Part shown: positions 4,989 to 64,000 of the stretch, in pieces
Layout: the number at the start of each line of letters is the position of its first letter
Position numbering within the stretch: position 1 is the stretch's first letter
Assembly: GCF_947568905.1 (NCBI RefSeq)
Contig: NC_079167.1
Location: 67,890,001 to 67,954,000 of the forward strand
Direction of reading: 5' to 3'
Origin: Ostrea edulis
Lineage: Eukaryota
Length of the DNA stretch: 64,000 bases
Translations under genes and position numbers: made by a program
The notes under the pieces: generated by a model
The model's input: the letters and a program-made list of their open reading frames with translations, nothing else
Told to the model about the DNA's origin: nothing
Databases searched by the model: none

Positions 4989-7900
4989 ATGATTTTCATC
5001 GACAATAACAACGTTAAGTATGAGGTCTGTCAGATCACTGTAACAGATGATAGCGAAGTGGAATTTACAGTCGAGAACCAGCCAAGCAAACGTGTGGTAG
5101 AGCAGACGCCATGTAAGTTTACTCCACTACATTCAGATCCCACAGAACAAGTACAGATACTGCCAGTCGAGCCGGGCGAGCATCGGAAATGTTCAATGTG
5201 TGAAAAACGTTTCACTGACACAGAATCATTGGAAAAGCATATGGGTTTACACACTTATGGGAGGGGAAATAACTGTGAAATTTGCGGGAAGTCCTTCAGT
5301 GCTAAATCCTTTTTGAAAGTGCACATGATGGTTCACACTGGGGAGAGACCTTTTACATGTGATATCTGCCACAAGGGTTTTTCTCGAAGCTCCAACCTCA
5401 AGGCTCATCGTCTGACCCACACCAATGAAAAGCCTTTTAAATGTGACATCTGTGACAAGGTTTTCACTCACCCCTCGAACATGAAGAAGCACATAAAGTC
5501 TCAACACACAGAAGGGAGGCCTTACAAGTGTGAATACTGCGATAAGAGCTACAAATTATCCAAGCATTTAAGGAGGCACATTATGGTTCATGATCAAGAT
5601 AACAAAAATAAAGTTCAGTACGTCTGCGAGGAGTGTGATCAAACATTTTCATCACTTGAAGCAGCTATAAAGCACAAAGAACAGCAGCATGAGGCTGGTG
5701 TTCCTGCAAATGACATGCAAGAGTTCGTTGTTGAAGAACTTGTTTCAGATGTGAATGGTGCCTTTTCATTGAAGAAAGATATTAAAATTCCACCCCAGGC
5801 TAAAATGCCTACAAATTCTTTATCTAAAGGGACAGGGAATATGAGGATAAAGTGTGATCACTGTACGAAAAGATTTCAAAATCAGGTAGACTTGGATAAG
5901 CATATGACACTGCATACAGGAGAGCGACCTTTCAAATGTTCCATTTGTAACAAAGGCTTCAATGCAAAATCATTTCTGAAAGTCCACATGGTGACACACT
6001 CAAATGAAAAACCGTATGAATGTGAAGTATGTGGGAAAGGTTTCAACCGACCCTCAAATCTGAAGGCTCATCGAGTTACTCATGATATCAACCCCAAACC
6101 ATACCCTTGCAATATATGTGGGAAAATGTTTTCACATCCATCTAATGTCACAAAGCATATCACAATTCACACAGATGAAAGGCCTTACCAGTGTGAATAT
6201 TGTGATAAAAATTTCAGACAATCCAAGCATCTATCACGACACATGCTTATCCACACTTCTGCACCAGGTTCACTTCGATGTGCTCGGTGTGAGAAAAGAT
6301 TCTTGGATGAAGACCAGTACCTTCAACACAAGAGAGAGCATGAGCAGAAAAGTCAGTTCAAATGCGAGTTTTGCGAAAGAACTTTTTTCCGTTCATCACA
6401 TCTAAAAAGACATGTACTAACTCATACCCATGGTCGAGCAAATTCCTGTGATTATTGTGGAAAACCTTTTAATTCCATGGCGAATCTTAGGAGGCATCTG
6501 ATGATAAATCATAAGAAAGATACCAAATATCAGTGCCAAGTCTGTCATCAGTTGATTTTGCAACCATCTCATCTAGCAAAGCATATCAAAGAGCACCAGT
6601 GCCCAGTTGTTTCAGTGAAGGAAGGGGAGAAAATTTTCCCCGAAGAAACTAATCAAGATGAGAGAGCTTATAAATGCTACCTTTGTAAGAAGATGTTCAA
6701 ACAACATATCCTACTTAAGAAACACCTCCAGGTCCACAATAAGATTCTTTACAAATGTGGAGCATGTGACAAACTTTATTCTTCCATGGCCGCCCTGAGA
6801 AAGCACATTGTTGTACATACTAGTGACGGTCCATTTAAATGCAACATGTGCTCAATAGAATTTGAGCAGTATTCCGAGTTAACAGAGCATCATCAAAAAT
6901 GTCATGCAGCTAGTAAAGATGAAAGAAAATATGTATGTGAAGTTTGTGGAAAGAGATTCAGATATCGACTGTCTGTTCGGAAGCACATGGAGCTGCATAA
7001 TATGGAAGAAGACAAAACTGCAATGTTTCAATGTGACGTTTGCACAAAAAAATTTCGTCACATTTCTTCACTTTCACGCCACAAGAAAAGTCACGAGCTA
7101 CAAACATTTGAGATGAAGGGAGATGGAGGTGTGTCCCAGACAATACATTATGTGTTGGAACAAGGTGTCCCCATCTCCAATGAAATGGAGCTGCAGAACC
7201 AGACAATACAATTAATACCAAATGATGAAGTTCCTGGAGAGGTAGCTGAAATTGAAATCCCAGCCAATGCAGTTCCATACATCACTGAAGAAGGAGGACA
7301 GCAAGTATTGCACATTGCCATTAATGACACAGAAAACCAGAAATCAACACAGTCAGTGATGTCAAATGATGCAGGAAATGAATTATCAGGGGTTAAAACT
7401 AACAACAGTCATACAACAGGTTTACAGACGTCCACGACAGGGACTGCTGGTAAGGCAGAGTATCAAGTTGTGGCATCAGGTGATGGAAAAACAGAATACC
7501 AGATTATTGAGACTGACAATTGTGGGAACTCAGGGGTGCTTGTTGTATCAACGGACAAAAGTCAGGTTGCCAGTAACAACAAAACAGACACGGGTATGCA
7601 TGTTTCTGTGACGGAGAGCAGAGCAGTAAGTGAAGTGTCGGGAAAATTTCAAGTTGTAGCCCCCAACTCAAAGAATGCCGAAGTGCTTGTTCATACAGCT
7701 GCAGGCAAAAAATTTCATGAAGGATCAGAAACTGTTTCAAATGGGAACACTCAAACTATGACAGAAGTGCAACAAATTGAAGAGAAACTAGAAACTGTGA
7801 CATATTTGAATTTCAGTGAAGGACAAGTGGACAAGAATTCATTTGATGACATTTCCTTTGTGGTGTCCAGTGATGAATCTGGAAAGCAGTATTTCCAAGT

Positions 7901-8246
7901 TCCATCAGAAATCCTCGGCAAAGCTTTCAATCTTCAGGCTTTGCATGCTTCAGGAGAGCCACTAAAGATTCAAACTGAACAAAGTGCCACTGGGAAATCT
8001 GGCAATAGTGCATCTGTGGAAAATGTCAAGATTATATATGCAGATACCCCTGCAGTAAGCCAAATTTCCTATGACGGTGAGTACATCCAGCTTATCGAAG
8101 GAGCTGAGAATTCCGAGATAGGGGAAGGGGTTGACCATCTTGCAGAAACTATTGTTGTCTTGGAGTCGCCCTCCAATATTTCCAATACTGACCATTCCTA
8201 TGTTAACACTTGTGAAACTAATGTTAAATCTGGACCAGACAAGTGA
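4989..8246 (+). CDS. C2H2 zinc-finger transcription factor, 1085 aa, 20 fingers plus a long acidic C-terminal region; single coding exon
   Basis: Uninterrupted ORF; 20 C-x2-C-x12-H-x3/4-H motifs counted, with TGERPF/TNEKPF linkers; fingers end near aa 700, followed by an E/S/T/Q/V-rich tail. Confidence 0.95.
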   Translation: MIFIDNNNVKYEVCQITVTDDSEVEFTVENQPSKRVVEQTPCKFTPLHSDPTEQVQILPVEPGEHRKCSMCEKRFTDTESLEKHMGLHTYGRGNNCEICGKSFSAKSFLKVHMMVHTGERPFTCDICHKGFSRSSNLKAHRLTHTNEKPFKCDICDKVFTHPSNMKKHIKSQHTEGRPYKCEYCDKSYKLSKHLRRHIMVHDQDNKNKVQYVCEECDQTFSSLEAAIKHKEQQHEAGVPANDMQEFVVEELVSDVNGAFSLKKDIKIPPQAKMPTNSLSKGTGNMRIKCDHCTKRFQNQVDLDKHMTLHTGERPFKCSICNKGFNAKSFLKVHMVTHSNEKPYECEVCGKGFNRPSNLKAHRVTHDINPKPYPCNICGKMFSHPSNVTKHITIHTDERPYQCEYCDKNFRQSKHLSRHMLIHTSAPGSLRCARCEKRFLDEDQYLQHKREHEQKSQFKCEFCERTFFRSSHLKRHVLTHTHGRANSCDYCGKPFNSMANLRRHLMINHKKDTKYQCQVCHQLILQPSHLAKHIKEHQCPVVSVKEGEKIFPEETNQDERAYKCYLCKKMFKQHILLKKHLQVHNKILYKCGACDKLYSSMAALRKHIVVHTSDGPFKCNMCSIEFEQYSELTEHHQKCHAASKDERKYVCEVCGKRFRYRLSVRKHMELHNMEEDKTAMFQCDVCTKKFRHISSLSRHKKSHELQTFEMKGDGGVSQTIHYVLEQGVPISNEMELQNQTIQLIPNDEVPGEVAEIEIPANAVPYITEEGGQQVLHIAINDTENQKSTQSVMSNDAGNELSGVKTNNSHTTGLQTSTTGTAGKAEYQVVASGDGKTEYQIIETDNCGNSGVLVVSTDKSQVASNNKTDTGMHVSVTESRAVSEVSGKFQVVAPNSKNAEVLVHTAAGKKFHEGSETVSNGNTQTMTEVQQIEEKLETVTYLNFSEGQVDKNSFDDISFVVSSDESGKQYFQVPSEILGKAFNLQALHASGEPLKIQTEQSATGKSGNSASVENVKIIYADTPAVSQISYDGEYIQLIEGAENSEIGEGVDHLAETIVVLESPSNISNTDHSYVNTCETNVKSGPDK

Positions 8247-10729: not shown

Positions 10730-12600
10730 CCCCCTCTACGATCTTTCTCCGTCAGCTCTCTCCAAGATAGCATTGGCCGACTAACTCTACGTCTCACAGG
10801 AACTTGTATGTTTAGAGCGCACTTGACTGCACTGCTGGATCTGACAACGTGGCCAGCGGAGTCTCCTTTCCCTTAAGATGAGGTCGAGGTCGTCGATGCC
10901 AAGCCGCCCCAGCGATTCAGTTGAACCCACAGTGGCCATATCTTCAGGCTTGATGTTACAGATCTGTCTTATCATGGCCCTGTCATTGCGTAGTAGGCGA
11001 TGAAGATTTGGCTTGGTCAGTGCCCAGGTCTCGCTGGCATGGAGCATATCGCTCCGTACGCAGGTGTTATACACTCGACCACGGGTCTTATAAGACAGGT
11101 GGCGTGATGTCAGGACTGGTAGCAGCTCCCTGATCTTTTTCCAAGCAGTCTTCACACGCGTAGTGGCTGCAAGGTCACAGCCACCAGCTGCGGAAAGCAT
11201 GTCTCCGAGGTAGCAGAAGGAGCCTACAACCTCCAACTTGTCCAGACCAACTTGGATATCACTCTGCGGCCTGCCGTCAAGAGGGCGAGCAATTCCCATG
11301 CATCTTGAATATCTGAAGTCAGGGTCCAAAGACAGGCATATGAGCCCACTGCATTTCTTGTGCACCCAATGCTTGCAGCCATTACAGAAAATACTATTGC
11401 TGCCTACACCTGTACGACATACAACATATGGGAAGCCGCCCGGGTTTTGCCCGCATTCACTCTCAGTCCTTTCCTTCCCATAGCTTCTTTCCAAGTCAGA
11501 AGCCTCTTGACACATTCATCCAACGAGTCAGTAATGATAACCAGGTCATCTGCATACAGATTCTCCCAGGGAACACCGGTGCGAAATTCGCGTGAAAGAG
11601 CCTCGAGTACGATGATGAAAAGCATAGGGCTGAGTACTGACCCCTGATGGACTCCGACCTTCACAGCAAACCCCTCACTGTAGCCATCACCAACGCGAAC
11701 ACAGCTACGGGCATTGGCATACATCCCCTGCACCAGACGCACAATCCACTCTTCCACACCAAGTTTTCGCAGTGCCCACCAGATCACCTTCCGAGGGACA
11801 CGGTCAAATGCCTCTTCGAGGTCCACGAACGCCATATAGAGCCGTTTGTTTACTGCAAGATATTTTTCCTGCACCTGCCGAACAACAAATATTGCGTCAG
11901 TTGTACCTCTGCCACGGGCGAAGCCAAACTGGGAGTCATCGAGTGTCACCAACTGCCTAATAAGGCTGTCCACAATCCTCTCCAGGACTTTCATGACTTG
12001 TTCTGTCAGTTTGAGTCCCCGGCAGTTGCCCCTGTCCAGAGCATCACCCTTGCCCTTGTAGAGGCAGACAATGAAACAAACTCTGCTCCCAGTCAGTGGG
12101 GACATTGCCATCACGGACGATTGAGGATGCATGGATACACCTGTGTCACCTGTGGCTCTGATCATCTCCACTACTATTCCCGATGGTCCAGCTGCTTTAC
12201 CCGACTTCATTTTGGAGATGGCCCTTTTCACCATATCAATTGTGGTTGGGACAGGTGGCCCTTCCACTGTTGATTCATCGGTTAGGTGTTCAGGGTCCCA
12301 TTCAAATTCCACATTTAGGAGCCTTCATAGTGCTCTAACCAAGCTTTCTCCTTTGCTTCTTGGTTCAATGACATCTCACCTGCATAATTCTTTATTGGTT
12401 TGTCGCCCACAACATCAACATTCTCCCTTCGCATCTGGTTTGCAAGGCGGTACACCTCTGAAGACCTGGTATCTACGTTTTCGTATATCTGCTTTTCTGC
12501 CTCATAGCGAGCATGATGAACTGCTTGTCTAGATATACGCTTGGTCGCGTCATACTCTGCTCTTGTGCCATTTCTTTCGGACTTTCAGACCTTGTAAGCT
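10730..12600 (-). mobile_element. 5'-truncated, frameshifted RTE-clade non-LTR retrotransposon (reverse transcriptase)
   Basis: ORFs 11404-12312 and 10787-11515 give RT motifs KAAGPSGI, QFGF, FVDLEEAFDRV, GVHQGSVLSP, LYADD, VNAGKT, then LRERRLRW and (frameshifted) GHV..R..RPMLSW; no endonuclease region present; clearly more GC-rich than the flanks. Confidence 0.95.
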
Positions 12601-53641: not shown

Positions 53642-55615
53642 TTAAGCATTGTCAGCAAACTCCAGCATTTTCAAGATGGTCGCCACTTCTCTGAAGGACT
53701 CTGAATCTCTGCCAAGCTCATCATGACAGCAGTTCACGGTGTGAACAGTCACCTTTCCATTCGAGAACTGAAAATTTATCAAATCAATGAAAGTGGTAAA
53801 AAGTTTGACATAATAGCTTTGGGAATAGTCTAAATTAGAAACTTTTTGAATAGTTTTGTATGAACATGAATGTTTCTGATTTTAACTGCAGCTGTCGCTT
53901 TTCTCCAAGTTATTTTGAACATATGTTAAAAGTTCAACCTATTTCTTAGCGTTGTTTTCTACAGCAATGTTCCAGGCAGAACCTACATTGTACCATTAAA
54001 TGGAAATGGACCTGTTCTAAAGACTAATAACCTTATAAATTACCCATAAAATGTCTTGTATCAATGGAAGGATAGAGACTATTAGAGGATCAGACAGTTA
54101 CTAATTATGGACTACAGAAGTGTAACAGAACACTGACTATGAAGTACACCCTCTCCAACTTTAAACAAAAGAATCTCACCTCACTCCATTTGTAGTCATT
54201 ACTTTTCTGACAAAATTCAAACTCCGATTTTTGTGGTCGAATAAGAATGACATCCGAGTCTATGGTGGGGCTCTGGTTCTGGATGGAATTCAGGGCCCTT
54301 TTGTGGTAGTTCTGCAGCATGTAAAGCACATCTGGAGCACTGCAAGCCACACCTTCATCCATTACACCATAGACAGTCTGTTTCAATTTCTCATCCAATG
54401 AATTCTCCATTTGGTATGCCTGTCCAAAATTTAAAGAAAGTGATATTTCCAAGTTCATTCTTCTATTGGTCTTTCTTTCAAATAGCAAGCAGAGCAAGTA
54501 GCCTAAAGAACCACAGCTCAACCACTCTTGTATTGAGCTCTACAGATTAGGATAGAGAAAATTCAAGTCTACACATATGTCCACTGAACTTTCAGCATCT
54601 AAAAAACAAAACCCCCACAATCCTAATGACCATTCTCTTTGATCTCGCAAAGCCATATCTCAATGATTTAAGATTATGACTTTACATAGATGCTTAGGTT
54701 TTGTGAATGGTCCCCTACACAATGCAATGCACTGAAGCCATGTTGGATGCACAGAGAGAGGGAAGGGACGGTGAGTAACCCCCCAATCCACCCCACCCCT
54801 GAGTTTCGTAAAAATTGAATATATTTGCTTATTCTTATGAGAATTTTAGTTTTAAAATACTAACTAAGTGTTATTCTTGAGAACAGAATGGGAAAACTTG
54901 CACGAGGTGAACCCCCGTCTGGTAAAAAAATGTGTGGTCTCTCTAATGTATACACACCTGCGCTCACTCTAACGGTATAGCACAGTCAACATACTATAAA
55001 CATACTGCTAGGATATCTCAACAATTCAAAATTTACATCAAGAAAATATCTGTATCAGCTGAACAATGCATATTTTCTAAATATAATTCCTCAACTGTAA
55101 GAAGCATAATTTGTATTCTGTGTTTAACCTACATATGTATCAACTCCAATGTGTTGATGGAAGCTCTTTAGAATGACATCATCACACACACTTGTGTCCA
55201 GCCCTCTCAGCTCCCTCAGTGTTTGTCCTCCCAGACTGGTCAGAATCTCTGGACTACTGTCTACGGCCACTACCTTACAGACGGAGGATTTCCAATACGT
55301 CTCGACGTTCTGTACAATGTGTAAAGCCAGGAGAGAACCAAAGGACAAACCAAGTAGATAGCACCCCTTCTCCAGCAGAGGGGCCAATTTCTGCAAGATG
55401 CATCAGTCATTTCACATACAGGACCACTTCTATATTATGTATCAGCGACTTGTTGACTTTATACATTGTTTTGTTTACCTTGGTGTAGAATCCGGCCATG
55501 GCTCTGATGGAAACCAGAGGTGTTGTAGGGATACACTGCACTCCATACAGTGGGTTGTCTAAAAACTGTCCGAGTAGTTTCCAGGATCCAAAAGAACCTT
55601 TCAAAGACAAGAAAT

Positions 55616-56142: not shown

Positions 56143-59100
56143 AGGGGCATAAAAAGTATTAAAATGAATTCCTATCATGAACATTTCGAAAAACAAAATA
56201 TTTGACAGTAATCACATTTTGGTAGCTGTATTATATTGCTGCTACTGAACTTACCATCCAAATCATGTAGAATGATCACGGGACTTTTATCCTGTTGCCC
56301 TGAAGAGAGTTGAACTAAGCAATCTTGAGGAACAGTGAACCAGCTTGTTTTTTCTGCCTCTGCCTGCATATTGGCATTATCATCCTTCACTTCATCAATG
56401 TTGGTATCAGTTGAGGTTTTTCTTTCACTCCTCTCCTCTGACATATCTCTGATTTTCTGGACAGTGAGTTTCATGAGATCTGAGAGGGACAGATCAATGT
56501 TGAACTGACTCTTCATGATTTGCTGGATTTCTATTTCCAGTAATGAATCCGTACATAGCTCTAGAAGGGTGGATTCAGGTCTTAAAGCAGCAGAGTCTTG
56601 CAGACCTTGAAGTAAAGGAATCTGTGTTTAAATTGCAACATAAACATTTATTTACCATGATTTCTGACATTCCCTAGAATGAACATACAAAATCCCCATT
56701 CAATTGTCTTCTGGAAAATAACTGTTTCTTGTTTATGTCAAATATTATTCTCCAACAAAGGCAAAATCCTGTAATGTTTGATATATGACCTCAACCTGTA
56801 AAGCTTTGACCTTATTGATCTTGTAGTGAATTAAGACATATTAAAGTGTTTATTTTGTATTGTTCAGAAAGTTTTCTTCAGATATTTTACCCAGAACTTT
56901 CACTATGTGCTCCATCAATGTCTGCTGCTTTTCAAGTGTTCCTGTCGTCATGGATGCCGAGGCTGAAACAAAACTGGACACAACTGGTTTAGACTGGCAG
57001 AGGAACTGGTCGAGGGAATCCAGACATGATGACATTCTCTGTGGTAAGGTCCTGCCGACTGCTGTCACCTTGTCCCCAAATTTCTTTACTGCCACACCCA
57101 CGTCTCCTATCATTCCCCACTGAATGGCTAGAGCTGAAAGGGGTTCATGAAATATCCTTAAACACACTGCATATATTCACAATTTTGTCAAACTAGGTAA
57201 ATATATCCAAAATGCATACAAAGGTTTTATTCACAGCATGCTTGCTCCTCCTTGAAAACCATTTTGCATAACTTTCCTTCTCTTCCTTGGAGCTTCATCT
57301 CTAAAGACTCCCAACCAGAGCAGGGTTCAGAGCTTAATTTTCTGCCTTATATACACCCCTCTAGTAAACATTATTGATATGGTTTTTTTTTCCAGAGTGC
57401 ATCTGTAGCAAAACTTACCTGGGAATCCAGCTGCCTGTCTCTGTTCACAAATTCTTTCCATTAAGGAGTTAGCATAACCATAGTTGGTTTGTCCAGCATT
57501 CCCTCTGCCACTGGCCACTGAGGAGAAAACAGTAAACCACTCCAGGTCTCTACACAGGGTTCTACTCCAATTGTCCAGATGGACAATGCCTACCACTTTA
57601 GGGCCAAGGACCTCTTTGAAAGTTTCATTTGATTGGTTTTTAAGCATCCCATCCTGCAGAACCTAAACGAATAATTCAAAACAGAAGATTTGTGATACAC
57701 AATATCAATATACTTCAAAGGAATGAAGAATTTACACGGTAGTCAGTACACACATGTAAAACTTTCTATTGGCCAGCCTACAACAGACACAAGACAATGA
57801 ACCTTGAAAGAGAATTATTGCCAAAACATTAACTAACCATTGCAAGGTGGAAAATTCCTCCAACAGGACCTTGTTCAATTGCTTCTTCCATGAGACGTCG
57901 ACAGCCTCCCTCTGAGGTGATGTCCTCTGTTGACAAACACACCTTAATCTTTTGCTCTCGTAGGAATTTAACTTTCCTTGCCTGGTACCCATTCTTGATT
58001 CCAGATCTGGATGAAAGAACCAGTTTCCTGGCTCCCTTGTCTACAAGCCAGGTGGCCAGTTCCAAACCGAATCCACCCAGTCCTCCTGTGATGATGTAAA
58101 CTTTGTCCGGATTGCACTTGGATGTGATTTTTACTGTTTTGGCTATAGGGGCAGTTTGATTGACAACCTGGTCTTCTTCATTACGAATCTTATTAGAAAA
58201 GTTATCAAGAATTTCTCAATTAAAGAAAGGTACTCTTTAAGTTCATGACATCTTTTGGTATCAAATAAGAAATACTATTTGAAATACAATAGATCATTGC
58301 ACTAAATTTTCTAAATGCAGTGTTATATACTATTTGACTGAAATGGAACTTGATTTCACAAGGGAACTAATCTGTAAACTAGCTACCTTGATGACAATTT
58401 TGGAGTGGTGTCCTTTCATTAACACCAGGTCTTCCAGAGCTCTTTGTATGTCGTTACACTGGAAGCAGTGGTTAGGGATGGGTCTGTAAGCTCCAGTCTG
58501 TATCCCACTAGACAACTCTTCCCATATCACATCAAAGTCCCCCTGCTTTATGTCTGCCAAATTCCACTTCTGGTGCTCCATGTAAGTACTAATTCTGATC
58601 AAGTCTGCATGAAAATCACTTATTTAAATAGTGCAGTGGTCTTGTGACCAAGGTTGTATAGAATAACAAGAGGCTCATGGGCACTAACAGTCACCTGAGA
58701 ATCACATATTTCTAACTTTTTTATCATTGACCTTGATCTTGCTGAATTGAACATGGTTTAGTGTCCAAATGCACTGTCTTGCCAAATTGAGCAACCATAA
58801 TGCCAAAATAAGCTTCTAATATGTCTCTTCCATTCAAAGTCATGACCTAGAATAGATATTCCTAACAGTTTTATTAGTTACCATGACCTTGTGTAACTTT
58901 ACTCCAAGGTCATGACATTGTTTACTTACAAACCCTGAAGTATGCTCATACACCTCCAACATGTTCATTTCATGCAAACACTTCAGCATTTTGTGCAAAT
59001 TATTCAGAATTCTGTGCAAACTGTTTTGCATTACATGCAAACCATTCCAGGATTGTTTTCGGTCTGTACAAGCAACCTTTGCACTAGTGATCCACTTCTA

Positions 59101-62100
59101 ATATCCTACAGTTGCAAAGTTATGACCAAGAGAAATGTTAAAATTTATCCATGTCCTTCACCTTGGCCAAATGACACTGGTCCATTCATGATACATGGTG
59201 TGGTCTTTGTACCAAGTAAAGTCTACAGTTATGACCCTGACAACTTCCTGTTGGTTTACATGAAACTTCACCCAAATATCATTGATTTAGGACCAGGAAT
59301 CATTGTACCAGGGTAAGCTTATTAGAAATCTTTGTGCCAAATATTACCTTTTAATGCCTCTCCATTGCAAGTCATAGAATGATAAACATTTTGATAATTT
59401 TTTTTTTCCAATGTCCTTGACCTCAGCTAAACAAATATGGTTCAGCCACCACACATTATAGTTATAAGCTATCTTTGTGTCAAGTATGATCTTGTAATGT
59501 CTTTCCATTGCTTAGTTATGGCCTGTAACAACATATCTAACATTTTTGCCAATTATCTTGAGAAGCTTGGCTAAATTACCCTGACCCTGGTACATGACAT
59601 ATTATCTGGTCACAGCCAATTATGTGCCAAGCATTAACTTCTAAAGTCTCTCCTTTACAAAGTACTGAAATATTTCTCTCATGACCTCAACCTTGGTTCA
59701 GGGTCATGAAACATGGTCTGATCATACATAGTCTGTGTGCTCTGTACAAGCTTCTGATATCTCTTATAAATTTACAGCCCACTGACGTTGTCTGTATAAC
59801 AAAAGGACAGAAGACATATTGATTTTATTAGACAATGTTCAAACTCTGTTGTGGCATCTAGCTTGTTTAGGAGTAAAGATTATTTTCAAAATGTAATGCA
59901 TTTTCACTAAATGAGCCTTGTGACAGCCCTTTGAACCAAGGGTCATGAATTTCATAATTCTAGTAGAAGCTAGCTCCATGTCCATCATAACTATGCACCC
60001 ATTTAATGTGCTAGATGTGCAGGAGTAGACTCTCAGAGATTCAAGGTAATTTCACTATATACATGTAATCCACATAGACAAAACTCTTGGACTTGAACCC
60101 TGTCCCATGAGCCACGACTTTCACACTGTTGGTGGTGGTCTTTTTACACATCAAGACTATGCACAATTTCTCTGCTACATGCTTTAAACTGTGTTTTAAT
60201 ATTAGTGTTGTTCCTGCCCTGCATCGTAAATGGAGCACAAACTCCTACCCCATAGATGCTACATGCCAAATTTGGTTCAATAGTATCTGAACAAATTACA
60301 AATGTTAAAATGTTCCGGGCACAACAAAGAACAAAACACAACAGGTCACATAACAATACTAGAGTAATCTAAAAACAGGCTATCCAAGTGACTAAGGTGA
60401 CCTAAAAACAGGATATCCAAGTGACTAAGGTGACCTAAAAATGTACAAGAACATTATATTTGAAGAAATCAGTCTGATTTATCTATTAAAGGAATAAATA
60501 GCTTTGACCTCTTACTTTTCTGGAACTTGTTTTGAGTGAAATCTATCACTTTTCCACCAGGAGACAAAACACCACTGTCAAATATTGAAGAGTTGACCAT
60601 TGTTGTCTTCACTACAAGATCAACACCTGGACAACAATTAAAAATCCTTATGTCAAACTTTTATTTCATATACACAAAATCTATCAAATAAACAATAAAC
60701 AACAAGAGATGTTTGTAAAGCAAATATGCCCCCCATGGAGCAAAATTAAAAAAGGTTATACACAGTATGCATCATTTAATTGATAGTAGTATCATCAATT
60801 CAAGATATTGAGCAGACAATATCTTCCTATGTCCAGAGTGGATTGACCATGTGACCTAAAAATCAATAGGGGTCATCTACTCCTTATGTTGTACCAGTGT
60901 ACCAAGTTTGGTGTCAATCAAGCAAATAATTCTTACAATATAGAAGACAATATATTGCTATGTCCAGTTTAACCCTTGACCTTTGACCATGTGACCTAAA
61001 AATCAATAGGAGACATCTACACCTTAGGATGTACCAGTGTACCAAGTTTGATGTCTGTCAAGCAAAGGATTCTCAAGATATTGAGTGGACAGGATATTCC
61101 TATGTCCAGAGTAAATCGACCCTCGACCTGAAAAACAAGAGGCCCGTGGGCCACATCGCTCACCTGAGTCACCTTGGTCCCTTATTATCAGAAGATTTTC
61201 CATATCTATTTGCATGTAAAACCGTAGTCCCTATTATGGCCCCAAACCTTCCCCTGGAGGCCATGGTTTTTGCAAACTTGAATCTACACTATGTCAGAAA
61301 GCTTTCATGTAAATGTGAACTTCTTTGGCCTAATGGTTCTTGAGAAGAAGATTTTTAAAAATTTTCCCTATATATTTGTATGTAAAACTTTGATGCCCCC
61401 CTTGAGGCCCCATCCAATCCCCGGGGTCCATGATTTTAACAAACTTGAATCTGCACTATATCAACAACAACAAAAAACAACGAAAAAAAAAACAACAAAA
61501 AAAACACTTTGACCCCTATTGTGGCCCCATCCGATCCCCGGGGGCCATGATTTTGACAATTTAGAATCTGTACTATATCAGGAAGCTTTCATATAAATCT
61601 CAGCTTTTCTGGCATAGTGGTTCTTGGGAAAAAGATTTTTAAAGATTTTTCCTATATATTTGTATGTAAAACTTTGATCCCCTATTGTGGCCCCATCCGA
61701 CCCCCGGGGGCCATGATCTTAACAATTTATAATCTGCACTATATCAGGAAGCTTTCATATAAATCTCAGCTTTTCTGGCTCAGTGGTTCTTGGGAAGAAG
61801 ATTTTTAAAGATTTTTCCTATATATTTTTATGTAAAACTTTGACCCCCTATTGTGGCCCCATCCGACCCCCGGGGGCCGTGATTTTAACAATTTAGAATC
61901 TGCATTATATAAGGAAGCTTTCATATAAATCTCAGCTTTTCTGGCTCAGTGGTTCTTGAGAAGAAGATTTTTAAAGATTTTCCCTATATATTTGTATGTA
62001 AAACTTTGATCCCCTATTGTGGCCCCATCCGACCCCCGGGGGCCATGATTTTAACAATTTAGAATCTGCATTATATAAGGAAGCTTTCATATAAATCTCA

Positions 62101-62668
62101 GCTTTTCTGGCTCAGTGGTTCTTGAGAAGAAGATTTTTAAAGATTTTCCCTATATATTTGTATGTAAAACTTTGATCCCCTATTGTGGCCCCATCCGACC
62201 CCCGGGGGCCATGATTTTAACAATTTAGAATCTGCATTATATAAGGAAGCTTTCATATAAATCTCAGCTTTCCTGGCTCAGTGGTTCTTGAGAAGAAGAT
62301 TTTTAAAGATTTTTCCTATATATTTGTATGTAAAACTTTGATCCCTTATTGTGGCCCCATCTGACCCCCGGGGGCCATGATTTTAACAATTTAGAATCTA
62401 CATTATATAAGGAAGCTTTCATATAAATTTCATCTTTTCTGGCCCAGTGGTTCTTGAGAAGAAGATTTTTTAATGACCCTACCCTATTTTTACCTTTTCT
62501 TGATTATCTCCCCTTGGAAGGTGGCCTGGCCCTTTATTTTAACAATTTAGAATTCCATTTACCTAAGGATGGTTTGTGCCAACTTTGGTTGAAATTGGCC
62601 CAGTGGTTGTTGAGAAGAAGTTGAAAATGTGAAAAGTTTACAGACGGACGGACGGATGCCGGAATACG

Positions 62669-62713
<45 letters not shown>

Positions 62714-63739
62714 CAATAGGGGTCCTCTTCAACTCATAACCAACCTACATATGAAATATCAATACAATCAAGTGAATGGTTCTCAGGATATTGAGCGGAC
62801 AACATGTGGTCTACCGACCGACATACAGGTGCAAAGCAACATGCCCCTCTTCTTTGAAGGGGGGCGCGGGGGCATTAAAAACACATACCAAAATTATTGT
62901 ACATGGAATTACTTAAGCAGAATTCAAATTTTAGCAGCTTTAGCAGAGAAACAATAGAACTAATTTATAGTTGTGCTAAAAATATGAAATTTCTGTCCCT
63001 CCATTCTCATACAGGGAAGCACTAATTAAATCATAATTATGTCAAATAGCGCATCAGCTCCTACTGTGTTAAGTACACATAGAATAATCTGCCGTCATTC
63101 AGGACATTTCATTGCAATAATCTGCCATCATTCAGGACATTTCATTGCAATCTGCAACTCTTCATCAATTTCAGGTATGAGAGTCTTTCATATACTTTCA
63201 AGATATAGACAACAAATCCATATTATGGACACATTGTTTCACCATTTGAACAACAAATCTACACAATACATATATTTTTTTCGCACTTAAAATGGAAATT
63301 CACAAATGCTTCTTCCACAGGAAAGACAGCTTGCTACACAGATGTTATACAGAAGCTTAATTTATAACACCAAGTTACCTTGACCACCGGTCAGTCTTAA
63401 GGCCTCAAACTTAGCCATGGAATTGTCCTCAACCACAAGTACTTGATTAGGATTCAGCTTCTCAAACCAGGACTGCAGGTAATTTTTCTTCACGGTTGAA
63501 GGGACAGTTACAAACACATCGCATTTCAAATTGATGGCCACCGATACAGCAGCGATACCAATGTCTGTGTGTCCATCGTAAATCAGCACTGAAGATCCTA
63601 TGCAGACATTCTCTTCAACAACCAAAGCTTTGATAGCTATCCCATATGCCCGGAGAACACAGGAGGCCTCTCGTAAGGACCAATCCTCTGGTACATCAAC
63701 CAAGAACCTTTTTTCTACAACTGCTGTTGTTGCTACAGC
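53642..63739 (-). CDS. FAS-like type I synthase, C-terminal 873 aa (ER-KR-ACP-TE); exons 63739-63379, 60626-60516, 58604-58387, 58188-57838, 57662-57419, 57133-56891, 56605-56255, 55597-55479, 55390-55133, 54419-54180, 53767-53642; 5' part lies beyond the window
   Basis: All introns GT-AG and phase-consistent (2622 nt). KR: YIITGGLGGFGLELA, PKVVG, FSSVASGRGNAGQTNYGYANS, LAIQWG; ACP: DSL; TE: GLSFG, VDSSP, C-terminal His. FASN symbol withheld because the ER is strongly divergent. Confidence 0.92.
55616..56155 (-). mobile_element. HINE-like element with ~140-bp internal repeats in a FAS-like intron
   Basis: AAACAAG terminus at 55616, 3 internal units, GACAGAAT microsatellite, hairpin ATGCCCC...GGGGCATAAAAA at the other end. 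Confidence 0.8.
58664..59800 (-). mobile_element. Degenerate HINE-like element(s)
   Basis: AACAAGAGGCTCATGGG terminus followed by decayed units with TGACCTTGA and CAAAGTTATG motifs; right boundary approximate. Confidence 0.5.
60700..62882 (-). mobile_element. Outer HINE-like element interrupted by a younger HINE
   Basis: AACAAGAGATGTTTG terminus at about 60701; its unit GACCT(A/G)AAAA(T)CAATAGGG resumes at 62714 after the insert; ends with an ACCG microsatellite, hairpin and GGCATTAAAAA. Confidence 0.7.
61134..62713 (-). mobile_element. Young complete HINE with about 8 units of the 166-bp satellite
   Basis: CCCCATC(C/T)GA motif at 61525, 61691, 61857, 62023, 62189 and 62355 (exact 166 spacing); canonical ends AACAAGAGGCCCGTGGGCC and AGCTCACTTGAGCTTTCAGCTCAGGTGAGCTAA. 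Confidence 0.95.
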
Positions 63740-63743
63740 CTAG

Positions 63744-64000
63744 AAACAAGAGGTACTGTGAGCAATGCTCACTAAGAATACCCCCCGCTTACCCCAATCT
63801 CCCAAAGGGTGTTGGTAATAAGTATAAACTACCTCTTTTCTGAGTGTAAAAAACAAATGGCATGACAAACCTAACCATATTGCTACTTCAATGTCCAGTG
63901 CGCGTGACCTTTGACCTTTTGACCCCAAAATCGATAGGGAACATCTTCATCCCATGGGTAGTCCATATGTATGATATGGTGACTGCAGGTGGAAAGGATA
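63744..64000 (-). mobile_element. HINE-like element 3' end abutting a FAS-like splice acceptor
   Basis: AAACAAGAGGTACTGTGAGCAATGCTCAC terminus followed by GTGACCTTTGACCTTTT units; runs off the window. Confidence 0.65.

What the first reader, a model, noticed from the sequence alone, without database searches (positions are those of the whole stretch)
63379..63739. FAS-like megasynthase with a degenerate enoyl-reductase: candidate animal polyketide (polyene) synthase
Seen: the ER nucleotide-binding loop reads VLIYDGHTDIGIAAV (63545-63589) where animal FAS has LIHSGSGGVGQAAI. The upstream A-x-x-V-P-V-V-Y-x-T motif is ASCVLRAYGIA, TVGS is TVPS, and the VLNSL...GRFLEIGK segment (exon 60626-60516) becomes VVKTT...GKVIDFTQ. 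In contrast the KR Rossmann motif and catalytic Lys/Tyr, the ACP Ser and the TE Ser-Asp-His positions are retained, and all 11 exons are open and in phase. Established: animal FAS-like PKSs (AFPKs) occur in molluscs, and an active KR and DH with a dead ER yields conjugated polyenes instead of saturated fatty acids. Inference: this is a specialised-metabolite synthase (pigment, lipid or defence compound), not housekeeping FASN.
Basis: partly seen in the sequence, partly recalled or inferred. Interest (0 to 1): 0.85.

Follow-up and report, generated by a model that had tools for sequence, protein, structure and literature searches.

The report
Oyster FASN duplicate, dead KS and ER
The window holds the back half of an intact, conserved oyster copy of the fatty acid synthase gene whose enoyl-reductase site is indeed degenerate. 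Its closest full-length relatives have also lost the chain-building (ketosynthase) active site, so it is most likely a non-condensing offshoot of FASN and not a polyene-making polyketide synthase.

Summary
Eleven minus-strand exons (63739 to 53642) encode ER-like, KR, ACP and TE domains of an animal FAS-type megasynthase. The ER NADPH loop reads YDGHTDIG instead of HSGSGGVG. The KR, ACP-Ser and TE Ser/Asp/His positions are kept.

The loop is not random decay: 41 exon-level ORFs from other oysters keep DGHTDIG, and ER exons have dN/dS 0.08-0.26 between two oyster species.

- A near-complete orthologue with identical exon sizes (L001) has all three KS catalytic residues replaced (Cys to Asn, His to Ser, His to Asn).
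- Scallop and mussel members also lack the first His.
- The family nests inside the bivalve FASN clade and has a TE.
- AFPK mo-clades 1-3 lack a TE and are restricted to heterobranch gastropods.

Lin et al. 2024 carry these sequences as "FAS" training data, and their main text has no occurrence of "active site" or "cysteine". The dead KS-like part is under strong purifying selection (dN/dS 0.075).

Best reading: a fast-evolving FASN paralogue of oysters, scallops and mussels with pseudo-KS and pseudo-ER domains. Its biochemical role is unknown.

The window's own KS exons lie beyond 64000 and were not seen.

The parts
63379..63739 (-). Exon 1 in the window (the finding): middle of the ER-like domain, with the degenerate nucleotide loop YDGHTDIGIAA at 63589-63545
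   Evidence: HMMER alignment to human FASN ER, E 4.7e-17. Splice sites. Loop conserved in 41 related exon-level ORFs.
60516..60626 (-). Exon 2: ER-like segment VVKTT...GKVIDFTQ, replacing VLNSL..EEK...GRFLEIGK
   Evidence: Phase-1 junctions. Same 111-nt exon in L001 and L006. Motif table.
58387..58604 (-). Exon 3: C-terminal end of the ER-like domain, ending KIVIK
   Evidence: Weak match to Drosophila FAS ER and QORL1. Same 218-nt exon in L001 and L006.
57838..58188 (-). Exon 4: KR, first half, with GGLGGFGLELA
   Evidence: Pfam KR 8e-21. Pig FAS E 5.5e-31.
57419..57662 (-). Exon 5: KR, second half, with the Lys and the Ser/Tyr/Asn (SSVASGRGNAGQTNYGYAN)
   Evidence: Pfam KR 1.6e-18. Motif table.
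56891..57133 (-). Exon 6: end of KR and linker to ACP
   Evidence: tblastn to FAS. Junctions.
56255..56605 (-). Exon 7: ACP (LELCTDSLL, Ser kept), linker, and start of TE
   Evidence: Pfam PP-binding match is weak (E 0.0047, below the curated cut-off). Collinear alignment. Acceptor read.
55479..55597 (-). Exon 8: TE part a
   Evidence: Same 119-nt exon in L001 and L006. Spliced TE aligns to FAS TE.
55133..55390 (-). Exon 9: TE part b, with GLSFG (Ser) and VAVDSSP (Asp)
   Evidence: The exon alone finds nothing in the PDB.
54180..54419 (-). Exon 10: TE part c
   Evidence: Acceptor chosen by higher spliced-alignment score and the same 240-nt exon in L001 and L006.
53642..53767 (-). Exon 11: TE part d, with the His (CCHDEL) and stop codon 53644-53642

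Best explanation
This is the 3' half of an intact, selectively maintained paralogue of animal fatty acid synthase (FASN). The paralogue arose by duplication within bivalves and is seen so far in oysters, scallops and mussels. It has evolved several times faster than the housekeeping copy. Two of its catalytic domains have become pseudo-domains. The ER has lost its NADPH loop and adjacent conserved motifs, which is shown in the window. The KS has lost its Cys-His-His triad, which is shown in the orthologous oyster genes and is inferred for this gene. By motif, the malonyl/acetyl transferase, dehydratase, ketoreductase, ACP and thioesterase remain competent. Such a protein cannot condense malonyl units by itself, so it is neither a fatty-acid synthase nor a polyketide synthase in its own right. 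Inference, not shown: the KS-like and ER-like bodies are the two dimer-forming domains of animal FAS. They are probably kept as the architectural scaffold for a MAT-DH-KR-ACP-TE machine. That machine would load, reduce, dehydrate and release acyl groups that are either made elsewhere or extended by a KS supplied in trans.
For: Anatomy and motifs in the window. Nearest relatives: exon-level ORFs at 70-76% identity all carry DGHTDIG, and nothing else exceeds 45%. L001 and L006 have the same exon sizes as the window: 361, 111, 218, 351, 244, 249 (243 in the window), 351 (354 in L006), 119, 258, 240, 123 (the last seen in L001 only). L001 carries KS, AT, DH, pseudo-MT, ER-like, KR, ACP and TE on one contig. 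In its KS, DTACSSS has become RNGNASG, EAHGTGT has become EISGSCN, and NMGHPE has become NVGNTE. This is confirmed by HMMER alignment to mouse FAS (Asn opposite C161) and to EcPKS2. A second oyster species (L020) has the same losses. Scallop P0205 and mussel P0230 share the change of DTA to RNG, have lost the first His, and have differently degenerate ER loops. Purifying selection between two oyster species: C-terminal half dN/dS 0.12, ER exons 0.08/0.12/0.26, KS-like part 0.075, AT 0.073. Phylogeny: the family clade has SH-aLRT 99 and sits inside bivalve FASN with support 98. The tree constrained to family plus bivalve FASN is 9.7 lnL better than the free search, p-AU 0.68. Transcription of family members: SRA transcriptome contigs in Lin et al. 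2024 supplements (for example SRR1542609_NODE_14828, coverage 20), where the authors labelled them 'FAS, FAS_train'. The same sample also yields a canonical FAS and a clade-4 AFPK.
Against: The KS, AT and DH exons of this gene lie beyond 64000. They could not be recovered from public contigs of the same species, which are all about 1 kb long. The dead KS is therefore inferred by parsimony from sister and outgroup lineages. The mussel member keeps the KS Cys, and the scallop and mussel members keep the second His, so the losses were stepwise and a lineage-specific state is possible. Evidence that the window's own gene is transcribed is thin. It consists of one 199-nt contig inside the ER exon in a run only guessed to be RNA, plus low depth over exon 2, with no splice joints seen. 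Motif retention does not prove that MAT, DH, KR and TE are active. No experiment bears on the scaffold idea. All public contigs diverge from the reference 12 nt upstream of the ER exon's acceptor, so the reference haplotype may be rearranged there.
Confidence: 0.75

Rival explanations
1. One reading: a self-sufficient AFPK-type iterative PKS. An active KS, KR and DH combined with a dead ER would give conjugated polyenes.
For: ER0 together with active KR and DH is exactly the EcPKS1/2 logic (PMC11831141). The ER, KR, ACP and TE observations hold. The mussel member still has the KS Cys.
Against: The KS triad is destroyed in both oyster orthologues examined, and the first His is lost in all lineages. 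The family nests in bivalve FASN. A TE is present, whereas AFPK mo-clades 1-3 lack one and occur only in Heterobranchia. The ER exon is closer to FASN (E 4.7e-17) than to EcPKS1/2 (E 1e-11 and 5.5e-11).
Confidence: 0.06
2. A partner subunit. The paralogue heterodimerises with canonical FASN through the conserved KS-like and ER-like interfaces. Its ACP is extended by FASN's KS in trans and processed by its own KR and DH without enoyl reduction. Its own TE then releases unsaturated or hydroxy acyl products.
For: The two domains that have lost catalysis but stay under strong purifying selection (KS-like 0.075, ER exons 0.08-0.26) are the ones that form the FAS dimer, according to established FAS structures. 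From my own knowledge of mutant-complementation work on rat FAS, an ACP can use the KS of the other subunit. KS/CLF heterodimers are a precedent for pairing an active KS with a dead one.
Against: There is no direct evidence of interaction or co-expression. The paralogue is only about 40-47% identical to FASN in the parts compared, so interface compatibility is untested. A homodimer would explain the same conservation.
Confidence: 0.15
3. A decaying or silent pseudogene copy of FASN.
For: Loss of KS and ER catalytic residues, long branches, and weak expression evidence for the window copy.
Against: There are 11 open in-phase exons with canonical splice sites. dN/dS is 0.07-0.26 in every exon between oyster species. 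The odd ER loop is invariant in 41 ORFs. Family members are assembled from transcriptomes. The two differences in the RNA-type contig are both synonymous.
Confidence: 0.03
4. The ordinary housekeeping FASN of this species.
For: Public annotation calls relatives 'fatty acid synthase(-like)'. Lin et al. 2024 class them as FAS.
Against: Ostrea edulis has a separate canonical FASN with intact KS and ER motifs at another locus (P0309/L022). The window gene is only about 40% identical to canonical FAS in the ER exon.
Confidence: 0.01

Closest known systems
[quoted passage not shown]
   Same: Same domain order through ER, KR, ACP and TE (and KS, AT, DH and pseudo-MT in L001). It nests phylogenetically within bivalve FASN. 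KR, ACP and TE catalytic positions are kept. Intron-rich gene structure.
   Different: The ER GSGGVG loop and the LNSL..EEK / GRFLEIGK motifs are lost. The KS Cys-His-His triad is lost in orthologues. Branches are roughly 4-10 times longer than those of canonical copies.
AFPK mo-clade 1 (Elysia chlorotica EcPKS1/EcPKS2; PDB 9cq1, 9ctk; Lin et al. 2024; PMC11831141)
   Same: A FAS-derived megasynthase with an ordered but inactive ER0 and an active KR. The ER and KR exons hit EcPKS1/2 at E 1e-11 to 4e-26.
   Different: EcPKSs have an active KS Cys, no TE, and occur only in heterobranch gastropods. This family has a TE, a dead KS, and belongs to the bivalve FASN clade.
AFPK mo-clade 4 (Lin et al. 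2024), the only AFPK clade reported from bivalves
   Same: Present in oysters, mussels and scallops. FAS-like with a TE.
   Different: It is a separate gene. The same transcriptome (SRR1542609) holds a clade-4 contig with DTGCSS and HSTGT in its KS alongside the KS-dead contig labelled FAS. Only KS-AT-TE is predictable in clade 4, whereas the KR here is a strong Pfam hit.
Bivalve 'fatty acid synthase(-like)' paralogues already in databases: Mizuhopecten P0205 (matches OWF51822.1 at the three KS motifs), Pecten P0040 (XP_033747566.1), Argopecten P0204, Ylistrum P0206, Mytilus edulis P0230, XP_022315551.1, CAG2191348.1
   Same: Same clade (SH-aLRT 99). Shared change of DTA to RNG in the KS and loss of the first His. 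Degenerate ER loops. KR and ACP kept, TE largely kept.
   Different: Only 35-50% identical to the window gene. The ER loops degenerated differently in each lineage (HDAGSDIG in scallop, ANASSSLG in mussel). The mussel keeps the KS Cys.
Non-condensing KS relatives in PKS systems (chain-length factor KS-beta, KSQ loading domains, KS0 of trans-AT PKSs). This is an analogy from my own knowledge.
   Same: A KS fold retained without the full Cys-His-His triad, often as a dimer partner or transfer station.
   Different: Those sit in bacterial type II or modular systems. KSQ keeps both His residues and KS0 keeps the Cys, whereas the oyster protein has lost all three.

Membership tests
Canonical animal FASN | KS catalytic Cys-His-His | not testable with these tools
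   The KS exons lie beyond 64000. In orthologues L001 and L020 all three residues are replaced. Scallop and mussel members lack the first His.
Canonical animal FASN | ER nucleotide loop H-S-G-S-G-G-V-G-Q-A-A and the following LNSL..EEK / GRFLEIGK motifs | tested here: not met
   The window reads YDGHTDIGIAA, VVKTTMVNS and GKVIDFTQ.
Canonical animal FASN | C-terminal TE with Ser-Asp-His | tested here: met
   The spliced TE region aligns over its full length to FAS TE, with GLSFG, VAVDSSP and CCHDEL at the triad positions.
Canonical animal FASN | Phylogenetic placement within the FASN clade | tested here: met
   The family sits inside bivalve FASN (support 98) once long-branch outgroups are removed. 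The constrained tree is better by 9.7 lnL, p-AU 0.68. Its KS sequences are classed FAS in Lin et al. source data.
AFPK mo-clades 1-3 (EcPKS type) | No TE domain | tested here: not met
   A TE is present. The definition is from PMC10764717.
AFPK mo-clades 1-3 (EcPKS type) | Active KS that builds the polyketide | not testable with these tools
   Not visible in the window. Dead in oyster orthologues.
AFPK mo-clades 1-3 (EcPKS type) | Inactive ER0 with active KR | tested here: met
   compared with PMC11831141.
AFPK mo-clades 1-3 (EcPKS type) | Taxonomic range: Heterobranchia | tested here: not met
   The genome is a bivalve (flat oyster according to notes). Nearest relatives are oyster, scallop and mussel genes.
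AFPK mo-clade 4 | Distinct KS lineage (FAS-HMM about 420-450 in Lin et al.) in which only KS-AT-TE is predictable | tested here: not met
   Orthologue KS sequences score 593-699 and are labelled FAS. Clade-4 contigs from the same sample are different sequences. The KR here is strongly predicted.
Bivalve KS-variant FASN paralogue (the grouping proposed here) | Monophyly with the oyster, scallop and mussel paralogues, and shared exon structure with the oyster genes | tested here: met
   Clade support 100 (with oysters) and 99 (whole family). Exon sizes match those of L001 and L006. The TE region scores best against scallop paralogues.
Bivalve KS-variant FASN paralogue (the grouping proposed here) | KS motif DTA changed to RNG, with loss of the HGTGT His | not testable with these tools
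   Outside the window. The KS exon of the window's species was not found.

The most novel reading that the evidence does not exclude
A megasynthase 'pseudo-subunit'. The KS-dead, ER-dead paralogue pairs with housekeeping FASN through the conserved KS-like and ER-like interfaces. The resulting asymmetric synthase has one reaction chamber that lacks enoyl reduction and carries its own diverged TE. Oysters, scallops and mussels would then make a distinct class of unsaturated or hydroxylated acyl products from the primary FAS machinery. This would be an animal counterpart of KS/CLF-type pairing.
Probability: 0.15. Interest if true: 0.8.

Novelty: new variant of a known kind. Interest (0 to 1): 0.55.

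Why it matters
Animal FAS-like enzymes are currently sorted into FAS, AFPK and PKS mainly by KS similarity. This gene belongs to a conserved bivalve lineage that falls in 'FAS' by that measure, yet it has lost the residues needed for both condensation and enoyl reduction while staying under strong purifying selection. Three consequences follow.

- Annotation as 'fatty acid synthase(-like)', or prediction as a polyene synthase from the ER alone, is unsafe without checking the KS.
- KS-dead sequences sit in a published FAS training set.
- A large multidomain enzyme has been kept, probably since before oysters, scallops and mussels diverged, for a role that is not chain synthesis. That role could be tested in farmed oysters, mussels and scallops, where lipid metabolism has practical interest.

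Tried and rejected
1. Read evidence for splicing and expression. The single read-laying run was dominated by a high-copy intronic repeat. It gave only one 199-nt exon-internal contig in a run guessed to be RNA, and no junctions.
2. Recovering the KS exon of the window's own species. The search for homologous proteins with the L001 KS exon returned only other oyster species. P0338 and P0001 could not be located on contigs. All contigs of the window's species are about 1 kb long.
3. The home-made spliced aligner with distant guides (parrot FAS) produced spurious micro-exons in the diverged ER and TE parts. Final models were set by hand and by close guides.
4. An alternative E9 acceptor at 55402 was rejected because there is no AG. 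An alternative E10 acceptor at 54539 was rejected on score and on exon-size conservation.
5. In the 50-row tree the free search put the family beside Ciona FAS. This was judged long-branch attraction, because the constrained tree is more likely.
6. Single TE exons find nothing in Pfam or the PDB. Only the spliced region does.
7. No biosynthetic neighbours were found in the window. The large ORFs are a C2H2 zinc-finger protein and a reverse-transcriptase fragment.
8. A paper search for a described KS-inactive bivalve FAS paralogue found none.
9. Structure prediction was not run, because it would not decide between the readings.
Full report
**What is in the window**

The finding's exon (63739-63379, minus strand) is flanked by an AG at 63741-63740 and a GT at 63378-63377. 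Its 120-residue translation matches the ER domain of human FASN (PDB 4w82 residues 94-202, E 4.7e-17). It matches the Elysia AFPKs EcPKS1 and EcPKS2 more weakly (E 1e-11 and 5.5e-11). That alignment shows three changes:
- HSGSGGVGQAA has become YDGHTDIGIAA.
- VPVVYSTAYYAL has become VLRAYGIAIKAL.
- TVGS has become TVPS.

Ten further exons follow downstream on the same strand: 60626-60516, 58604-58387, 58188-57838, 57662-57419, 57133-56891, 56605-56255, 55597-55479, 55390-55133, 54419-54180 and 53767-53642. All have GT-AG borders and a continuous frame. Together they give 873 residues and a stop at 53644-53642.

The KR is well conserved. Pfam KR scores 8e-21 and 1.6e-18, and pig FAS matches at 5.5e-31. 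GGLGGFG, the Lys and the Ser/Tyr/Asn are intact. The ACP keeps its DSL serine.

The spliced TE region (259 aa) aligns over its whole length to FAS thioesterases. GLSFG, VAVDSSP and CCHDEL sit at the Ser, Asp and His positions. Single TE exons alone are too diverged to hit Pfam or the PDB.

The second ER exon has also lost the VLNSL..EEK and GRFLEIGK motifs that are invariant in canonical bivalve and bird FAS.

**The odd ER is conserved, not decaying**

An exhaustive HMMER search with the ER exon found 545 relatives. Only one exceeded about 45% identity: a 110-aa exon-level ORF at 71%. A word-indexed search and cluster look-ups added more of these. All 41 such ORFs, from several sequencing projects, read [CY]-DGHTDIG at the loop.

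Two contigs, L001 (15.9 kb) and L006 (5.6 kb), carry the homologous gene from two other oysters. Their exon sizes match the window's: 361, 111, 218, 351, 244, 249 (243 in the window), 351 (354 in L006), 119, 258 and 240 nt. The last exon, 123 nt, is seen in L001 only, because the L006 contig ends before it.

The window protein is 67-69% identical to them, and synonymous sites are saturated.

Between L001 and L006 (dS 0.26), dN/dS values are as follows:

| Region | dN/dS |
|---|---|
| C-terminal half overall | 0.12 |
| ER exon 1 | 0.08 |
| ER exon 2 | 0.12 |
| ER exon 3 | 0.26 |
| KR exon 1 | 0.12 |
| KR exon 2 | 0.06 |

The ER-like domain is therefore maintained by selection, and the gene is not a pseudogene.

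**The decisive point is the KS**

L001 holds nearly the whole gene, with KS, AT, DH, pseudo-MT/pseudo-KR, ER-like, KR, ACP and TE. In its KS:
- DTACSSS reads RNGNASG.
- EAHGTGT reads EISGSCN.
- SNMGHPE reads TNVGNTE.

All three catalytic residues are therefore replaced. HMMER alignments to solved structures agree. The Asn lies opposite Cys161 of mouse FAS (5my0). The Ser and Asn lie opposite the two His residues of EcPKS2.

A second oyster species (L020, from the same sequencing project series as L006) has the same His1 and His2 replacements; at the Cys its contig shows DASG, the tail of the RNGD.SG motif seen in oyster transcripts of Lin et al..

The AT (GHSVGE, YWRG, AFHS) and DH (H...G....P and the Asp) motifs are intact in L001.

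The KS-like part has dN/dS 0.075 between the two oysters, the same as the AT at 0.073. It is a conserved pseudo-domain, not a relic.

**The family across bivalves and in the literature**

Annotated full-length proteins from scallops (P0205 Mizuhopecten, P0040 Pecten, P0204 Argopecten, P0206 Ylistrum) and a mussel (P0230 Mytilus edulis) are named 'fatty acid synthase(-like)'. They share several features:
- the change of DTA to RNG in the KS;
- loss of the first His;
- degenerate but different ER loops (HDAGSDIG in scallops, ANASSSLG in the mussel);
- intact AT, DH, KR and ACP motifs.

The TE is mostly but not fully kept: Argopecten has the Ser replaced by Ala, and the mussel has no aligned Asp or His.

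The scallop has His at the Cys position, and the mussel still has the Cys.

The supplements of Lin et al. 2024 (PMC10764717) contain these same KS sequences: SRR1542609_NODE_14828, XP_022315551.1, CAG2191348.1, OWF51822.1 and SRR7044533_NODE_32422. They appear in the alignments used to train the FAS_KS models. For three of them (SRR1542609_NODE_14828, XP_022315551.1, CAG2191348.1) the source data seen give 'FAS, FAS_train', with FAS-HMM scores of 593-699. Canonical FAS scores about 750-810 and EcPKS1/2 score about 585.

The main text has no occurrence of 'active site' or 'cysteine', and a full-text search found no paper on a KS-inactive bivalve FAS paralogue.

One transcriptome (SRR1542609) yields three separate genes: a canonical FAS contig (DTACSSS, HGTGT), a clade-4 AFPK contig and the KS-dead contig. 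That paper also states that AFPK mo-clades 1-3 lack a TE and are confined to Heterobranchia, while clade 4 occurs in all mollusc classes.

**Phylogeny**

I built trees on the region the window encodes (mid-ER to TE). The window gene groups with L001 and L006 (support 100), then with the scallop paralogues and the mussel paralogue. In a 50-row tree the free search placed this long-branched group next to Ciona FAS.

With the long-branch non-mollusc rows removed, the eight-member family (SH-aLRT 99) falls inside the bivalve FASN clade (98).

In the full data set, the tree constrained to unite the family with bivalve FASN is 9.7 log-likelihood units better than the free-search tree, with p-AU 0.68.

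The gene is therefore a fast-evolving bivalve duplicate of FASN. Earlier notes from this scan call the genome a flat oyster. I checked that only partly. Ostrea edulis has a canonical FASN at a different locus (P0309/L022) with intact DT.CSSS, HGTGT and HSGSGGVGQAA. L022 shares the window's intronic repeat family at 77-82% identity.

**Interpretation**

A dead ER with active KS, KR and DH gives polyenes, as stated in PMC11831141. But that logic needs an active KS.

In this family the KS is catalytically dead in the oysters and crippled in scallops and mussels. By parsimony, the window gene, which is sister to the two oyster genes, has a dead KS too. I hold this with about 0.9 confidence, but it is not observed.

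The best-supported statement is that this is a non-condensing FASN paralogue with pseudo-KS and pseudo-ER domains. How it works beyond that is inference.

KS and ER are the two domains that form the dimer in animal FAS, according to established structures. Both stay under strong constraint here. I therefore think they are kept as the scaffold for the remaining MAT, DH, KR, ACP and TE activities.

Two roles remain open, and neither has been tested. The scaffold may act alone on acyl or beta-ketoacyl thioesters loaded by the MAT. Alternatively, it may pair with canonical FASN and use that KS in trans. The second option would partly rescue the idea of unsaturated products.

**Expression**

For the window's own gene the evidence is thin. 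A run guessed to be RNA holds one 199-nt contig inside the ER exon. It shows low depth over exon 2 and none over non-repeat intron. No junction-spanning records were seen. The contig's two differences from the window (63554 G>A, 63590 T>C) are both synonymous when read against the sequence. Family members in other bivalves are present in transcriptome assemblies.

**Caveats**

- The 5' half of the gene is outside the window.
- All public contigs of this species agree with the window up to 63751 and then diverge, 12 nt upstream of the ER exon's acceptor. The reference haplotype therefore has an insertion or a mis-join there.
- Motif retention is not activity.
- dN/dS values are simple Nei-Gojobori estimates on hand-built gene models.
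- The date of the duplication is unresolved.

**Verdict**

Novelty is 'new variant of a known kind'. The sequences are public and annotated as FAS, but I found no description of their doubly dead state or its conservation. Interest is moderate, at 0.55.

Noticed in passing
window 63740-64000, with L010-L019: Every public contig of the same species that crosses the ER exon's acceptor matches the window at 99-99.9% identity up to 63751. From there it continues with an entirely different sequence. The reference haplotype therefore has an insertion, rearrangement or mis-join 12 nt upstream of the 3' splice site. Window 63752-64000 weakly resembles the intronic repeat at 60960-61021.
   Followed up: partly
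window 61506-62470 (intron between exons 1 and 2): A 166-bp tandem array of 5.8 copies with 96% matches lies inside a repeat-rich stretch (about 60800-62950). That stretch reaches depths of 1e5 in WGS contigs and is also abundant in RNA-type runs. Related copies lie at about 33000, 44000 and 50000 in the window and in the introns of the canonical FASN locus L022.
   Followed up: partly
window 4989-8246 (+): A single 1085-aa open reading frame encodes a multi-C2H2 zinc-finger protein (Pfam zf-C2H2, 2.4e-84).
   Followed up: partly
window 10787-12312 (-): A retroelement remnant: a reverse-transcriptase ORF (RVT_1, 9.6e-29) next to an ORF with a weak PHD-finger match.
   Followed up: no
Lin et al. 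2024 (PMC10764717), Supplementary Data 2 and 5: The published FAS_KS and mollusc FAS_KS HMM training alignments include at least five sequences whose KS triad is partly or wholly lost: SRR1542609_NODE_14828, XP_022315551.1, CAG2191348.1, OWF51822.1 and SRR7044533_NODE_32422. This could blur the FAS/AFPK score boundary those models draw.
   Followed up: partly
L001 1627-1854; P0205; P0230 (the KS HGTGT loop): Where the first catalytic His is lost, all three lineages have gained a Cys in the same loop: SGSCN in oysters, SGCSV in scallop, GSSCT in mussel. The meaning is unknown.
   Followed up: no
P0204 (Argopecten irradians paralogue), TE motif: The TE nucleophile motif reads GVAFG (Ser replaced by Ala) in this scallop, while its close relatives keep GVSFG. 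In the mussel P0230 the TE Asp position aligns to Glu (no Asp) and nothing aligns at the His.
   Followed up: no
window 63554 and 63590: The only RNA-type contig over the ER exon (run X1, organism A) differs from the window at two positions. Both differences are synonymous (Ile ATC to ATT, Ser TCA to TCG).
   Followed up: yes
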